DNA from: Styela clava
Lineage: Eukaryota
DNA length: 64,000 bases
NCBI RefSeq assembly: GCF_964204865.1
Contig: NC_135254.1
Location: forward strand, 17,794,001 to 17,858,000
Direction of reading: 5' to 3'
Under the pieces are notes generated by a model. The model worked only from the letters and a program-made list of their open reading frames with translations, had not been told where the DNA came from and made no database searches. Positions 24,745 to 45,825 of the stretch are shown here, one piece after another. Numbering within the stretch: position 1 is the stretch's first letter; every line of letters starts with the position of its first letter. The position numbers were made by a program, and so were the translations under genes.

Positions 24745-26362
24745 ATGTGGCAAAGATTAATTTTCTTGAGCTTGCTATTTAGCGTGTTTTGTGAAACATG
24801 CCATGGTGAAAGGTCCGAAGACTCTCTTATATGTAAACGAGTAGACAACGATGCTGCCAATGTTTTAATCACGGGCCCTCAAGGTCCTCCCGGTTTTCCT
24901 GGCTTACCTGGACTGGATGGAATACCAGGACTTGATGGTCAACCTGGATTACGAGGAATGGACGTAGACCACAACAGATTGGTAATTTTGGTTGAGCAAA
25001 CTGTCGCGGAAGGTAAATTATGTGTTTGTTTAACGCTTATTAAGAATGTTTAGTAAACTACGAACTGTCTATTTATTGCGTTTTTAACAAGAGTCCATAA
25101 TCAATATATATGTACTAATTTATCCTTTGCTATTTCAATCGATCGTAGTTGAGTCACTTCAAAAAGACTACTTCAAAGTTCTTTTGACCGAACTTTCAAA
25201 ATAATAATATAAAATTACTACCAAAATGTGCTAAATATAGCCCGTGGCATCATAATATCGTTTAAGCATAATACCGAAATTACGCCCGAAAATGATTTTC
25301 GCCAAGAACGCTGTAGAGTAGGAGCTTGATTGATTTTTTCCATTTTGTAATAGAGTAAAAAGTATAGCCTACATCATAAGATATTGATACTTTGGTTTAG
25401 TTCATTTTCCCAAACTGCCACTGTAGGTGCAGAAAAACGTTCCTCCGATTAGTATTCTTGTTCGTTTTGATGGCCGTATGTTATAAAACTTTTTTATTTC
25501 GGTGAATAGATATTACTGAATTTTACTATAATGCTATCCGTCGCTTTATTATGTTTTTATGAATAAAAATTTTCCATTTCAGCTGTTCATGCGATGAAGA
25601 ATGTAAACCCACAGCCAGACTTCCGATGCGAGAATCTCAAAAACAAAGTCGTAGTCGATGGCAAATGTTTTTTCACTGTTTTGCCGGAGAATGAGGTCAA
25701 ATTTCTTGCAGCTGAGCAGCTGTGCACCGATAGAGGAGCAACACCAGCAAATATTTACGATCGCCATCAATTTGGCAAGATAATGAATTATCTTCATGAG
25801 ATAAGACAAACATTTTATCACGTATATCTTGGAATGGAATTTGATCCTGAGGTTAGTAGACATTTATGAAATCAACATATATATTGCCGATAATTCACCC
25901 ACATCATGTCATTTTCCTTCCAAAAATTGTTTCAAATTAACTAAAAAAGGGTATTGTTTGAGGTAACATTTAGCATATATATTTACAACTGTATTTCAGA
26001 TGAAAACCGCTATACATGTCATAATTGCAAACAACTTTCAATTAATATTAAAAATATGGAAAAACCTTCACTCAAATGGTTTGAGGGTTTCATATAATCT
26101 TTTAACATGCATTGTTTTACCTATGCATTGTAATATTTGACAGAATGACGACCTCACCTTCTATGACGGAAGTCCAGCTCAATACACAAGTTGGCGCTCC
26201 GGAGATCCCGTTAGACGTGTGGCGGATCCGGTGAAAATGACACGAGTGGCCATAAACGTTATGAGTGATAGCAACAACTCCGGTAATGGAATGTTGACCA
26301 CGGCTATGATTTGGCCTAAAACGGGAGTACTTTGCGAATCTGCAGTAGAAAGAGAGCCTTAA
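24745..26362 (+). CDS. Collectin-like secreted protein, copy A (251 aa)
   Basis: Exons 24745-25012, 25583-25851, 26144-26362 (intron phases 1, 0). Signal peptide [21 protein letters not shown]; 10 Gly-X-Y triplets; amphipathic neck; CTLD-like motifs DGKCF...AEQLC...GATPANI...VYLGM...YTSW...GVLCE. Confidence 0.9.
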
Positions 26363-27727
26363 ACTGGCATAAACAAGACTACACTCATCTCGTGTCGTAT
26401 ATATCAACTTGTCATTCTATATCTAACGACTATCACGGTCCAGAATTTGTCGTCTGAAAGCAAATGTATTTTAATGTTAGTTTTATATTACTACACATCT
26501 TCACTATCTAGAAGTTTTATGAATTGTCGGAGTAAAATTTGATATCGCTTATTTGTATACCTCAGTAATGTGAAAACATTGACAGCAATGAAATACTGAA
26601 ACATATTATAAAGACAAATTTGCCTGTAACTCTATAGGTTGAATACTAATTGTTCTTCAGCAGTTGATGTCAAACCGTTGCTATGTAATAAATATTGGAA
26701 CGAGAAGTTTATATGTATTAATTGGGATGTGGATCGTAGGCCTATTTATCTCCTGGAACAGAAATCAGGACAAGAACGCTTAGGTAATCGCAAGGCAAGA
26801 TAGGATAGCCAATAATTTGTACGACAATGACATTTCAGTTTCCTATTGGGGATTTCTTTCAGATTTAGTGTTGTTATCTGTATTCCTTCTGATATAAGTA
26901 AAGTTCCGAGCCTCTTAATAACAGGAATGATCGCTTCCAACTGAAAAGCATGTCCCGAGAATTGAGAAATAAGTCAAATAATATTGTTTCGTAATTTGAA
27001 TTTCTAAAGACTGAATATTTGAATTGATATCATCAATTGCAGATATCGACATAAAACATTGGCAATAAATATTCTGCTATAAACAGAATTTCATCTAGCT
27101 TGGCAGAATATAACGTGATAGCTTAGGATAGCTTATGACGAGTCGCAAAATCGACGGTCCTTCCGGAAACATAACAGTTACCCGCGAGTTACTAGAAGTT
27201 GAAATTCCCAAGCCCACCACCTCAGCCAGTGTGCAATAAATTGGAAGCAATATCGAGATGTATTTCCGTCCCTGACCCACCAGGGACCGCTCGTGTAGAG
27301 CTTTGTTCGGAGCGTACAAATTCGACCTATGAAATAAATATGTTGAATGGCAGTTTTATTGAAATTACACAAAATTAATATTATCAACTAGTGATATATC
27401 AAAAATTATCAAATAATTTAATTTTATTTCATTTGTTAATAATTCGGTATTTGCAAATGCCATCTGCAAGTTGAAGAGGGGATTTTATGCGACTACAGTC
27501 AGCTTTGACCAACTCGGGCAATTGGTATAGTGAGAATTTTTCCATTAGCCAGTGTGGGCCGATAACTTTTGAAAGACATTCACCTATACATTAAATCACG
27601 ATCTCACTAGAAATCAATATAACTGCTCGTATAAAATCTTGTTTATAGCAATTCAAACCATAAAAAAGAATATATACTATAAGACTATAAAGAACGTATG
27701 GTTTTCGATATTCTACTCCATGTAAAC

Positions 27728-43300: not shown

Positions 43301-44237
43301 GGAAGTTTAATTTATTAGACTGAAAACTAAGGAATTTTCACCGAGACGCCTTGTAAAATTAATCAGTGCAAATCGTCCGTGGTAGTAAATTCTTTCTTTT
43401 TTCAATAAACCATCCTGGATTATCTGTCATTTTGTTTTAAACGAAAGGAATATAGCTATGAATGGCGTCATACTATATCGTCGCATTTTTGAAATTATTG
43501 AATGCATTCGTAACGAGATTCTGGGTACATAATGAATAGAGAAAACATTGACGTAACTAGAGCAGTTATGTTCAAGGAACAAAGATATGGTACCCCTTTA
43601 TGAGCAGCCATTTTTTTCATAAATTTTTATAGCCAACAAGTATTTTAACTTGAAAAAACTAAAATTAGATGTTGACCAAATCGAATTTTTTGTTCACTTT
43701 GGGCCTTGTTGAGCAAGTTTTTGATATACTTGCTTTTATCTAAAATTTTGCAGTTAAAAAAAAATAGTAATATTTTCGTCATATTAATACAGATATTGAA
43801 TTTAAAACTTCATTATAGCGTCATAATATAGTTTAGTAAAATCCAATAGTATTATCTTTCTAATTTTCAGATTTTGAAATTTTTCCCAATGAGATCTTGC
43901 GTATGCAGCTGTGTGCATTACCGTAGTTCAATTACAGCATAATTTCTTGACCCTTTGCTGCCGCGGCACGGTTTAATGATCACAGCAGACTGTTTCCTAC
44001 ACTAGCTATGTAGTTCCTACAGTTCGATTTAGTTACAAAGTTCAAGCCTCTTGCTCCTGTTGGAATAGTATGCTATTCCTCAACTTCTCACCCCAACTAC
44101 AATCAGAATAAACACTAAAAACACATGAAATGATGATTCACTAATGTATATATAGTTAGCAACAGAAAAAAAAACGATATTGAAATCTTTCATCATGCTT
44201 TGGCCTTTAAGTAAAATAGGAACATGTTGATGCATTT

Positions 44238-45825
44238 TCAGATCTCTCTCTCTATTTCAGCTTCACACAGTACTCCTGTTTTGGGCCAAATCATAGCTGT
44301 TGTCAACATGCCATTGCGAGGGTTATCTCGGTCGCTCAGAACATCTATGGCAACACGTGTCATTTTCACAGGATCTGCCACATTTGGAACTGGATCTCGA
44401 CCCCGCCAACTCGCGTATTGAGTTGGAGTTCCATCATAAAGAAAGAGGTGATAATCCTGTCAAAAGATTTAGCAATTGCACTTCAGAGTTTTTGCCTAAT
44501 CATTTTTGTACATTTTTTACCGTATCAGAGATATCATATATACACCTAATGGGGTTTCAAGATAATAATTAAATTACACTCATGCCTCGAAATTAAATCT
44601 GAATTTCAACGACCAACAATAGTGTCGTGTACATGGAGGGCAGTGACATTTTATACACATCAAATGCTGCTAATTAAAGTGTATAAGAAGGCTCTGTGTG
44701 CTTTATAATTATAAAGCATTATGTCATTAATTAATGATATATATATATGCCTGTTTCAAGAAAAAGGTAGTTTGGGGTACGGTGCGACTGGGCTGGCGCT
44801 CTATAAAAGGAGCAATAATCATGATTGGTTGGCTTTGTTTTTCAAAATCTTGCAAAATGATTAAGTGTGTTTATATTTACTTTGTGTCAATATGTTACAA
44901 TGCAATCTAAGTTTATCTCCCCCCCCCCTCCCCCCGTTTCAAACTGTTTTGCCAACATTACTGATAGTTTCGCAAATTTCGTGCAACTGTCTCTTGATTA
45001 AAAATTTACAATTAGCTCTGTATGTGTCAGCGATTGTTTGTGACCATCAGTAATGTGATTGTTTTTGCGTAAGAAAAAGAATGCAACTCTATGAAAAAAA
45101 AATATTAACAATCTGTTTACAAACCGAAGGATTGAATTCCATGCCAAGATATACATGATAAAATGTTTGTCTCAAGTCGTGAAGATAATTCATTATCTTG
45201 TTGAATTGATGGCGATCGTAAATATTTGCTGGTGTTGCTCCTCTGTCGATGCACAACTGCTCCGCTGCAAGAAATTTGACTTCATACTCAGGCAAGACAG
45301 CGAAAAAACATTTACCATCCACTTCAACTTTGCTCTTTAGATTCTCACACCGAAAGTTTGGCTGTGGGTTTCTATTTTTCGATGAATGAATAGCTGAAAC
45401 GGAAAATGAGTGATATTTAATAAAAAGTCGTCAGAAACAAGAATAAAAATGAAAAAGCTGAAACCACGCACGTCTATATGTATGTTTTGTGGTCTTAAAA
45501 TACTGATTTACTTATAGCAAAAAGCACCGATTCTACAATAAACACTTATCATTGTACCTTCTGCAACTTGTTGCTCAATTGAAATCTCCAATCTGCTGTA
45601 GTCTAACCTGGGACCTGGAGCACCTGGCAATCCAGTTCGACCTCTACTTCCTTTAAGACCAGCAACTCCAGGAAAGCCTGGAGGGCCTTGCGGGCCCGTG
45701 ATCAAAACATTGGCAGCATCGTTTTCTACTCGTTTGCAAATAAGAGAGTCTTCTGATCTCTCGCACAAACAAGTTTCATAATACACGCCGATAAAAAAGC
45801 ACAAGATAATTACTCGCTGCAACAT
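44238..45825 (-). CDS. Collectin-like secreted protein, divergent inverted copy E (251 aa)
   Basis: Exons 45825-45558, 45393-45125, 44456-44238; identical exon lengths and phases to A; open frame. Confidence 0.9.

What the first reader, a model, noticed from the sequence alone, without database searches (positions are those of the whole stretch)
24745..45825. Five-gene family of collectin-like proteins whose lectin domain lacks the canonical sugar/Ca2+ site and inner disulfide
Seen: all copies encode a signal peptide, a near-invariant Cys segment ([10 protein letters not shown][D/E][10 protein letters not shown]), exactly 10 Gly-X-Y triplets, a helical neck and a CTLD. Established: collectin/MBL CTLDs bind sugar through EPN (or QPD) and WND motifs and carry an inner Cys pair. 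Here the EPN position reads GDPV/RDPV, WND is replaced by GMLTT, and exon 3 has only the terminal Cys (GVLCE), so the inner disulfide is gone. The replacement sequence (DPVKMTRVAI...[18 protein letters not shown]) is strongly conserved, even in divergent copy E. Inference: a lineage-specific collectin-shaped family under purifying selection for a non-classical, probably Ca2+-independent ligand, either in innate immunity or as an extracellular matrix component.
Basis: partly seen in the sequence, partly recalled or inferred. Interest (0 to 1): 0.75.

Follow-up and report, generated by a model that had tools for sequence, protein, structure and literature searches.

The report
Collagen-stalked lectin-like genes of a sea squirt
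A sea squirt (Styela clava) carries a tandem cluster of expressed genes for small secreted proteins built like our collectins, but their head domain has lost the usual calcium-and-sugar site, so what they bind is unknown.

Summary
Window 24745-45825 holds five three-exon genes, four on the + strand and one inverted. Each has a signal peptide, an invariant Cys segment, 10 Gly-X-Y triplets, a neck and a C-terminal CTLD-like domain.

- **Intact copies.** Four are intact and match RefSeq models of Styela clava, first auto-named "pulmonary surfactant-associated protein A-like" or "collectin-12-like" and now "uncharacterized".
- **Copy C is broken.** It has a 14-nt deletion in exon 2, a Gly-to-Ser break in the collagen and an early stop.
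- **Expression.** Contigs from three studies join copy A's exons exactly at the predicted GT..AG sites. Copies B and E are also seen.
- **Selection.** dN/dS is 0.15-0.25.
- **Head domain.** It fails Pfam Lectin_C on its own. It is 37-48% identical to the five domains of a S. clava multi-CTLD protein that passes Lectin_C.
- **Motifs.** DPV sits where EPN should be, there is no WND, and the inner Cys pair is absent.
- **Not peculiar to these genes.** These features are shared by a wider S. clava CTLD clade (115 exon-2-like matches, a lower bound).
- **Distribution.** No member of the family or of its C17 sub-clade was found outside S. clava.

The scan had earlier noted other collagen-stalked families in this genome (discoidin heads), but not this one. 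Verdict: a new variant of a known kind, of moderate interest.

The parts
24745..25012 (+). Copy A exon 1: signal peptide, Cys segment, 10 Gly-X-Y, neck (ends in phase 1)
   Evidence: RNA contigs join 25012 to 25583 in X1, X4 and X9. RefSeq model P0023.
25583..25851 (+). Copy A exon 2: first half of the CTLD-like head (three Cys)
   Evidence: RNA joints on both sides.
26144..26362 (+). Copy A exon 3: second half of the head (DPV, VAINV, GNGMLTT, GVLCE) plus stop
   Evidence: RNA joint 25851 to 26144. Contigs run on to about 26700, the 3' UTR.
29703..29970 (+). Copy B exon 1
   Evidence: Joint 29970 to 30447 in X9. Model P0024.
30447..30718 (+). Copy B exon 2
30993..31211 (+). Copy B exon 3
33856..34123 (+). 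Copy C exon 1 (Gly to Ser break in the fourth triplet)
34660..34914 (+). Copy C exon 2, with a 14-nt deletion that shifts the frame: pseudogene
   Evidence: Truncated RefSeq model P0026, 121 aa.
35198..35407 (+). Copy C exon 3 (stop three codons early)
39803..40070 (+). Copy D exon 1
   Evidence: Model P0028.
40754..41014 (+). Decayed exon-1-like relic inside intron 1 of copy D
   Evidence: 35% identity, 1 TGA and 2 TAG inside.
41224..41495 (+). Copy D exon 2
41772..41990 (+). Copy D exon 3
45558..45825 (-). Copy E exon 1 (divergent, inverted copy)
   Evidence: Exact RefSeq model P0002 = XP_039269076.2. An X4 contig carries a 30-mer unique to this exon.
45125..45393 (-). Copy E exon 2
44238..44456 (-). 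Copy E exon 3

Best explanation
This is a tandem cluster in Styela clava of four intact genes and one broken gene. A sixth and a seventh copy lie 6.4 Mb away.

Shown:
- The genes encode small (251-252 aa) proteins with a hydrophobic leader, a 23-residue invariant segment holding one Cys, ten Gly-X-Y triplets, a short neck and a C-terminal domain.
- That domain belongs to the C-type lectin-like superfamily.
- The genes are transcribed and spliced as modelled, and they are under purifying selection.
- The head comes from a large S. clava CTLD clade. The clade keeps the outer disulfide cysteines (C0-C0' and C1-C4). It has no inner pair, reads DPV for EPN, has no WND and reads YLGM for WIGL.

Inferred:
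- The proteins are secreted.
- The chains form collagen and coiled-coil trimers, cross-linked through the N-terminal Cys.
- The three heads bind a ligand without the canonical Ca2+ site 2, through the conserved surface around VAI(N/D)V and GNGMLTT.
- They act as a soluble multivalent recognition or bridging molecule.
- With no Lys in the X position of any collagen triplet, they probably do not dock MASP-type proteases as MBL does.
- The collagen stalk was probably added to this CTLD type within the tunicate lineage, independently of vertebrate collectins.
For: - **Anatomy and models:**
- **Species and names:**
- **Transcription:** contigs of X1, X4 and X9 (three studies) skip 25013-25582 and 25852-26143 at GT..AG, at word depth 106-1307. 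Intergenic bins 26800-27799 have depth 0. The DNA-like run X17 covers 30 of 30 bins and has no such joint. The copy B joint is seen in X9. An E-specific 30-mer is in an X4 contig.
- **Selection:** dN/dS is 0.15-0.25 in 10 of 10 pairs. NGMLTT..GVLCE shows 6-7 synonymous and 0 non-synonymous codon changes between E and A, B or D. The Cys segment shows 3-6 synonymous changes and 1 non-synonymous change.
- **CTLD homology:**
  - P0023 against the five domains of P0001: 37-48% identity, E from 8e-32 to 4e-39, across the whole head.
  - P0001 scores Lectin_C 104.5 bits over profile positions 3-106 of 107.
  - The family profile hits CTLDs of FcRY at 5.3e-6, PLA2R at 1.6e-5, CD302 at 0.009 and SP-A at 0.02.
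- **EPN position:** P0001's YGDPV aligns to YGEPN of mannose receptor CTLD4. PGDP aligns to PGEP of SP-A.
- **Clade-wide loss of the inner Cys pair:** 17 of 18 exon-3 translations have only the terminal Cys.
- **Same intron position in P0001's gene:**
- **No Lys in the collagen of A-D; Lys in a Y position in E:**
Against: - Pfam Lectin_C is below threshold for A (15.3 bits) and B (13.3 bits), against a cut-off of 22.6. It is absent for D, E and F. It is also absent for the single exons.
- Pfam Collagen is below its cut-off too, at 19.6-25.8 bits against 27.2.
- The last 40 or so residues of the head match no solved CTLD. The WND-to-GMLTT mapping and the fold of the loop region are therefore unverified.
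- Ten triplets is a very short helix, and trimerisation is assumed.
- Tissue and induction are unknown because run names are coded.
- The runs are only guessed to be RNA, although the spliced contigs argue for it.
- Absence outside S. clava may reflect sparse sampling of related ascidians.
Confidence: 0.6

Rival explanations
1. They are still calcium-dependent sugar-binding collectins. The longer loop (SD-x-NN-x-GNG plus the two DP motifs) would form a rebuilt metal and sugar site, and they may be the sequence behind the sugar-affinity-purified collagenous lectins reported from Styela plicata.
For: - The acid-Pro of EPN is kept as DP in 5 of 5 copies, and the loop is rich in Asp, Asn and Ser.
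- Collectin-like lectins were purified from the sister species. I saw only the citations and one passage in PMC5465252.
Against: - By my manual alignment to recalled MBP-A numbering, four of the five canonical site-2 ligand positions are V, T, T and T.
- The loop residues differ in copy E (RDNPR against SNNSG).
- More distant clade members have no acid at the EPN position: GHP, TYP, NLP.
- The S. plicata papers are not held, so no sequence or size link could be checked.
Confidence: 0.15
2. They are structural or matrix proteins, for example of the tunic, a mucus net or a basement layer. In this reading the head is a protein-protein assembly module rather than a recognition domain.
For: - Contig word depth is very high in some runs, up to 1243-1380. 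The tool warns that this is a poor measure of expression.
- The N-terminal 23 residues are invariant, which fits an assembly interface.
- Non-lectin CTLDs often bind proteins (PMC7618208, passages).
Against: - Thirty residues of collagen is short for a matrix fibre.
- Tandem duplication with divergence in the neck, the collagen X/Y positions and the first third of exon 3 is more typical of recognition families.
Confidence: 0.2
3. The head is not a CTLD at all, or the family is decaying and without function.
For: - Pfam Lectin_C fails for the family.
- One window copy and both distant copies look broken.
Against: - Homology to a protein that passes Lectin_C is strong, and the profile hits solved CTLDs.
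- dN/dS is 0.15-0.25.
- Spliced transcripts of A, B and E are seen.
Confidence: 0.04

Closest known systems
Vertebrate collectins (MBL, SP-A, SP-D, CL-K1; CTLD group III)
   Same: Order of parts: leader, N-terminal Cys segment, collagen, alpha-helical neck, C-terminal CTLD. RefSeq first auto-named these genes 'pulmonary surfactant-associated protein A-like' and 'collectin-12-like'. SP-A is a weak PDB hit (E 0.02).
   Different: - Only 10 triplets.
- DPV in place of EPN/QPD.
- No WND.
- No inner disulfide cysteines.
- YLGM in place of WIGL.
- No Lys in an X position of the collagen.
- The head is split over two exons, while leader, collagen and neck share one exon. In MBL2 the CRD is one exon and the neck another (recalled, not from a call).
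- The best solved relatives are mannose-receptor-family CTLDs, not collectins.
Styela clava LOC120332703, 'macrophage mannose receptor 1-like' (P0001), and its neighbours on contig C17 at 15.27-15.34 Mb
   Same: The head type is the same. Identity is 37-48% over the whole domain and includes GDPV, VAIDV, GNGMLT(S/T) and GV(L/V/I)CE. The intron position inside the domain is also the same.
   Different: Five tandem heads and no collagen stalk, Cys segment or neck. It passes Pfam Lectin_C.
CTLD8-type domains of the mannose receptor family (PLA2R, FcRY, DEC-205)
   Same: They are the best solved-structure hits of the family profile. The DEC-205 stretch 1253-1349 printed also shows no inner Cys pair and no EPN.
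   Different: They are parts of large membrane receptors. Similarity is confined to the first two thirds of the domain.
Collectin-like collagenous lectins of Styela plicata (Nair 2000; Green 2003, 2006) and MBL-like collectins of Ciona (Bonura 2009; Skjoedt 2010)
   Same: They are tunicate proteins with collagen plus lectin character. Secretion rises in inflammation, according to the passage in PMC5465252.
   Different: Those were defined by sugar affinity or by MBL-like motifs. I saw only the review's passage and reference list. The primary papers are not held, so no sequence comparison was possible.
Collagen-stalked discoidin-head genes of the same genome (earlier notes s1-817517 and s1-817498)
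   Same: Same species and same stalk-plus-neck layout, in tandem arrays.
   Different: They have a discoidin head. Their stalks are said to keep the protease-docking lysine motif, which this family lacks.

Membership tests
C-type lectin-like domain superfamily (Pfam PF00059 Lectin_C) | Scores above Pfam's gathering threshold (22.6 bits) | tested here: not met
   A scores 15.3 bits and B 13.3 bits. D, E and F give no hit at E <= 10. Single exons give none.
C-type lectin-like domain superfamily (Pfam PF00059 Lectin_C) | Significant homology to accepted members | tested here: met
   P0023 against P0001 gives E 4e-39 over the whole head. P0001 scores Lectin_C 104.5 bits over profile positions 3-106 of 107. 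The family profile hits FcRY and PLA2R CTLDs at 5e-6 and 1.6e-5.
C-type lectin-like domain superfamily (Pfam PF00059 Lectin_C) | Cysteines of the outer disulfide (C1-C4) and of the long-form N-terminal hairpin (C0-C0') | tested here: met
   FRC, GKC, QLC and VLCE are present in A, B, D and E. The bonds themselves are not testable here, and the nomenclature is recalled.
C-type lectin-like domain superfamily (Pfam PF00059 Lectin_C) | Inner disulfide (C2-C3) of the upper lobe | tested here: not met
   Exon 3 has one Cys in 5 of 5 copies and in 17 of 18 clade members. 'At least two highly conserved' bridges is from PMC7618208 (passage).
C-type lectin-like domain superfamily (Pfam PF00059 Lectin_C) | WIGL core motif | tested here: inconclusive
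   It reads YLGM in all copies. The G and the hydrophobic pattern are kept, and Trp is replaced by Tyr.
C-type lectin-like domain superfamily (Pfam PF00059 Lectin_C) | CTLD fold | not testable with these tools
Collectins (collagen-containing Ca2+-dependent lectins) | N-terminal Cys segment, collagen, neck and C-terminal CTLD, in that order | tested here: met
   Pfam Collagen scores 19.6-25.8 bits, just under its 27.2 cut-off. The coiled-coil nature of the neck is inferred from a heptad pattern read by eye.
Collectins (collagen-containing Ca2+-dependent lectins) | Ca2+ site 2 motifs: EPN or QPD, plus WND | tested here: not met
   DPV lies at the EPN position (alignments). There is no WND in exon 3.
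Collectins (collagen-containing Ca2+-dependent lectins) | Ca2+-dependent sugar binding | not testable with these tools
   This needs recombinant protein.
Collectins (collagen-containing Ca2+-dependent lectins) | Protease-docking Lys in the X position of a collagen triplet (MBL, CL-K1 and ficolin type; motif recalled) | tested here: not met
   There is no Lys in the collagen of A-D. E has Lys in a Y position, in GLK.
Collectins (collagen-containing Ca2+-dependent lectins) | Descent shared with vertebrate collectins | tested here: inconclusive
   The nearest relatives are non-collagen S. clava CTLDs. The exon layout differs from the recalled MBL2 layout. No tree was built.

The most novel reading that the evidence does not exclude
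The heads represent a structural subclass of C-type lectin-like domain found so far only in Styela clava. It has no inner disulfide, a loop region about 11 residues longer than in MBP-A, and an invariant GNGMLT(T/S) strand in place of G-x-WND. The subclass expanded to more than a hundred exons and was mounted on a collagen stalk independently of vertebrates. On this reading the collectin architecture was re-invented around a new, calcium-independent binding mode.
Probability: 0.3. Interest if true: 0.55.

Novelty: new variant of a known kind. Interest (0 to 1): 0.35.

Why it matters
Collectins are a textbook case of how a trimeric stalk turns weak single-site binding into strong pattern recognition. 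Tunicates are the nearest invertebrate relatives of vertebrates. Here is an expressed, selected tunicate family that keeps the stalk but has replaced the whole sugar and calcium apparatus of the head. If the ligand could be found, it would show what else this scaffold can be used for, and whether the layout arose more than once. The interest is limited for three reasons. Non-lectin CTLDs are common. The genes are already in RefSeq as models. And nothing here bears on function beyond sequence, splicing and selection.

Tried and rejected
- **Exon-by-exon Pfam scan of copy A.** It gave only a sub-threshold Collagen hit. On that evidence alone I considered that the head might not be a CTLD. I rejected this.
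- **hhalign of the family alignment against a canonical Clytia CTLD protein.** It gave probability 2% (Neff 1.3) and was uninformative.
- **Exon-3 profile of 18 paralogues against solved structures.** It matched CTLDs only up to the EPN position, at non-significant E values of 0.13-1.2. The top hit for the remainder was RNase HI at E 0.03, which I take as chance. The WND mapping therefore stays an inference.
- **EF-hand-like reading of the SDSNNSGNG loop.** Considered by eye and dropped, because the loop is not conserved in copy E.
- **Gene conversion as the cause of the invariant blocks.** Rejected, because synonymous differences are present inside them.
- **Pfam on intergenic ORFs.** Nothing was found.
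- **Literature.** Searches found no paper on these genes in the held library. 'Collectin' at word start also matched 'collecting', so most of the 80 hits were irrelevant. Supplements were closed and not asked for.

Every full-length sequence used (P0002, P0023, P0024, P0028, P0031 and others) was a RefSeq or UniRef model returned. In one search the 'all' rows are sums of per-exon counts, not a joined sequence.

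
Full report
**What is there.** The window is G000:C5:17794001-17858000 of a 377-Mb assembly. The protein of the inverted copy is identical to XP_039269076.2 of Styela clava, so the organism is this stolidobranch sea squirt. 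A pattern of six GGN-spaced triplets hits 21 times at five places, against 0 expected. Reading the DNA and the frames gives five three-exon genes:

| Copy | Exon 1 | Exon 2 | Exon 3 |
|---|---|---|---|
| A | 24745-25012 | 25583-25851 | 26144-26362 |
| B | 29703-29970 | 30447-30718 | 30993-31211 |
| C | 33856-34123 | 34660-34914 | 35198-35407 |
| D | 39803-40070 | 41224-41495 | 41772-41990 |
| E (minus strand) | 45825-45558 | 45393-45125 | 44456-44238 |

- Exon 1 ends in phase 1, and the second intron is in phase 0.
- Similarity between E and the others is confined to the exons. A and C also share intron sequence.
- The models equal the RefSeq models that the protein searches returned. These are A = P0023, B = P0024, D = P0028, E = P0002, of 251-252 aa.

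**Check of the observation.** The following hold in all five copies:
- the hydrophobic leader;
- the segment [10 protein letters not shown][D/E][10 protein letters not shown];
- a single Cys in exon 3;
- GDPV (A-D) or RDPV (E) after W-R-x;
- the block [18 protein letters not shown].

Ten Gly-X-Y triplets are present in A, B, D and E.

Copy C is broken:
- A 14-nt deletion in exon 2 removes the FRC codons and shifts the frame.
- The fourth triplet has Ser for Gly.
- Exon 3 stops three codons early.
- RefSeq gives it a truncated 121-aa product.

So 'all copies encode' is wrong for one of the five.

**Transcription.** One read-laying run was allowed, and I laid 24600-30599.
- In three small runs from three studies (X1, X4, X9), contigs skip exactly the two predicted introns of copy A. 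The joints are 25012 to 25583 and 25851 to 26144, both GT..AG, at word depths of 106-1307.
- The intergenic bins 26800-27799 have depth 0, and the introns have depth about 5-10.
- A fourth run (X17) covers 30 of 30 bins evenly and shows no such joint, as DNA would.
- The runs are only guessed to be RNA by the tool, and the spliced contigs are the evidence that they are.
- Copy B's first joint (29970 to 30447) is seen in X9.
- An X4 contig that overlaps B's conserved segment runs on into 30 letters that occur once in the window, in exon 1 of copy E. E is therefore transcribed too.
Tissue and condition are unknown because names are coded.
- Contigs cannot give transcript ends. They span about 24605 to 26700 for copy A.

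**Selection.** Nei-Gojobori counts were made per exon and then summed. They give dN/dS of 0.15-0.25 in 10 of 10 pairs. dS is 0.09 for A-C, 0.26-0.37 among A-D, and 0.66-0.91 to E. Codon by codon:
- The 18 codons NGMLTT..GVLCE differ between E and A, B or D at 6-7 codons, all synonymous.
- The 23-codon Cys segment has 3-6 synonymous changes and 1 non-synonymous change.
- The leader, the collagen X/Y positions, the neck and the first 24 codons of exon 3 change freely (11 non-synonymous against 2-4 synonymous codons in that last part).

The invariant blocks are thus held by selection on the protein, not by gene conversion.

**What the head is.**
- Pfam does not recognise it. The single exons give nothing at E <= 10.
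- The full models give Lectin_C at 15.3 bits (A) and 13.3 bits (B), against a cut-off of 22.6. D, E and F give none.
- An exhaustive HMMER scan of 1.84 billion representatives with exon 2 found only 9 proteins at E <= 0.001. By name these are six S. clava proteins, two unnamed Logan proteins, and one Clytia CTLD protein that looks like a generic match.
- The best hit, P0001, is a S. clava protein of five tandem domains, named 'macrophage mannose receptor 1-like'. It passes Lectin_C with 104.5 bits over profile positions 3-106 of 107.
- P0001 aligns with copy A over the whole head at 37-48% identity, with E from 8e-32 to 4e-39.
- A profile of the family hits solved CTLDs of FcRY (5.3e-6), PLA2R (1.6e-5), CD302 (0.009) and SP-A (0.02).

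Membership of the CTLD superfamily is therefore well supported, but only transitively. The structure predictor was closed, so the fold was not tested.

**The binding site.**
- In the printed alignments, P0001's W-R-Y-G-D-P-V lies on W-A-Y-G-E-P-N of mannose receptor CTLD4. The clade's W-x-P-G-D-P lies on W-Y-P-G-E-P of SP-A. The EPN position therefore reads DPV.
- Beyond that point, an 18-member exon-3 profile finds no solved CTLD.
- Counting back from the last Cys, and comparing with recalled MBP-A numbering, N-G-M-L-T-T falls on N-G-K-W-N-D. More distant paralogues keep G-M-x-N there, which fits this register. This mapping remains an inference.
- On this register, four of the five site-2 ligand positions are V, T, T and T.
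- The canonical features, namely at least two conserved disulfides, EPN/QPD, WND and WIGL, are as stated in PMC7618208 (passages).
- The head has four Cys in the positions of C0, C0', C1 and C4 (nomenclature recalled), no inner pair, and YLGM for WIGL.

**Not a peculiarity of these five genes.**
- All five domains of P0001 share GDP(V/I), VAID(V/I), GNGMLTS and GV(V/L/I)CE.
- Its gene has the same intron position inside the domain.
- In the genome, exon 2 finds 115 matches at E <= 0.01. Only 150 of 241 candidates were scored, so this is a lower bound.
- Exon 3 finds the family, 8 matches in the C17 cluster and weaker ones.
- 17 of 18 aligned exon-3 translations lack any inner Cys.
- Other clusters of the clade also have a collagen-like exon upstream. 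They lie at C19:10.25-10.29 Mb and C5:6.18 Mb. Their exon 1 is unrelated to this family's.
- A vertebrate precedent for a CTLD without the inner pair is visible in the DEC-205 stretch printed.

**Distribution.**
- The word search with copy E found 4 clusters among 393 candidates.
- The profile search with A2 found 7 proteins among 8000 scored candidates.
- All of these hits are S. clava.
- The exon-1 type occurs only in the window and at C5:24.22 Mb. There, one copy has all three exons but a gap in exon 2 relative to the intact copies, and another is fragmentary.
- Absence elsewhere may reflect sparse sampling.

**How it most likely works.**

Shown:
- secreted-type leader;
- Cys segment, 10 triplets, neck and a CTLD-superfamily head;
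- expression and purifying selection;
- no canonical site-2 motifs;
- no Lys in an X position of the collagen.

Inferred:
- cleavage after the leader, leaving one Cys for inter-chain bonds;
- trimerisation through the collagen and a three-heptad neck (read by eye);
- three heads presenting the conserved VAI(N/D)V/GNGMLTT surface to a ligand bound without Ca2+ site 2;
- no MBL-style MASP docking (motif recalled);
- the stalk added to this head type within the tunicate lineage, because the nearest relatives lack it and the exon layout differs from the recalled MBL2 layout.

Rival readings are a rebuilt Ca2+ and sugar site, a matrix role, and decay. They are weighed in their own sections of this report.

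**Literature.**
- The review PMC5465252 (passages and reference list) cites collectin-like collagenous lectins of Styela plicata and MBL-like collectins of Ciona.
- The primary S. plicata papers are not held, so a link to this family could not be tested.
- Searches turned up no paper on these S. clava genes in the held library. Supplements were closed.

**Earlier notes of the scan.** The notes returned describe collagen-stalked discoidin-head arrays in the same genome that keep a docking lysine. This family does not keep it.

**Verdict.** The cluster is real, expressed and selected. It is best filed as a collectin-shaped variant built on a non-lectin CTLD type that has so far been found only in S. 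clava. It is already present in RefSeq as uncharacterised models, and its function is untested.

Noticed in passing
window 40754-41014 (+): A decayed exon-1-like piece lies inside intron 1 of copy D (35% identity to exon 1, 1 TGA and 2 TAG). This explains why that intron is about twice as long as in the other copies.
   Followed up: partly
window about 27800-29000: A high-copy repeat lies between copies A and B. The DNA-like run X17 has depth 870-2730 here, against about 25 around it, with many loose ends. An ORF from it gave no Pfam hit.
   Followed up: partly
L004 and L007 (G000:C5:24.22 Mb): Two further family copies lie 6.4 Mb away. L004 has all three exons and 11 triplets, but a 4-nt or 7-nt gap in exon 2 relative to the intact copies. 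An older RefSeq model (P0031, 255 aa) reads it as intact. L007 has only a damaged exon 2.
   Followed up: partly
L018, L019 (G000:C19:10.25-10.29 Mb); L020 (G000:C5:6.18 Mb): Other clusters combine a short collagen-like exon with a head of the same clade. The C19 collagen reads GRPGKRGIQGMKGEIGPPG, with Lys in an X position. The exon 3 of L019 also has no inner Cys.
   Followed up: partly
P0032 (contig C17): An 845-aa S. clava protein named 'E-selectin-like', with a Sushi domain, carries the same head type at 48% identity over half of the query.
   Followed up: no
window 30595 joined to 25729 in run X9: One contig 'goes back 4867' from exon 2 of B into exon 2 of A. I take it for an assembly chimera between near-identical paralogous exons, not a transcript.
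   Followed up: no
I did not examine it.
   Followed up: no
window 42878-43291 (-): Two overlapping ORFs of 129-137 aa lie between copies D and E. They have no Pfam match, and their nature is unknown.
   Followed up: partly
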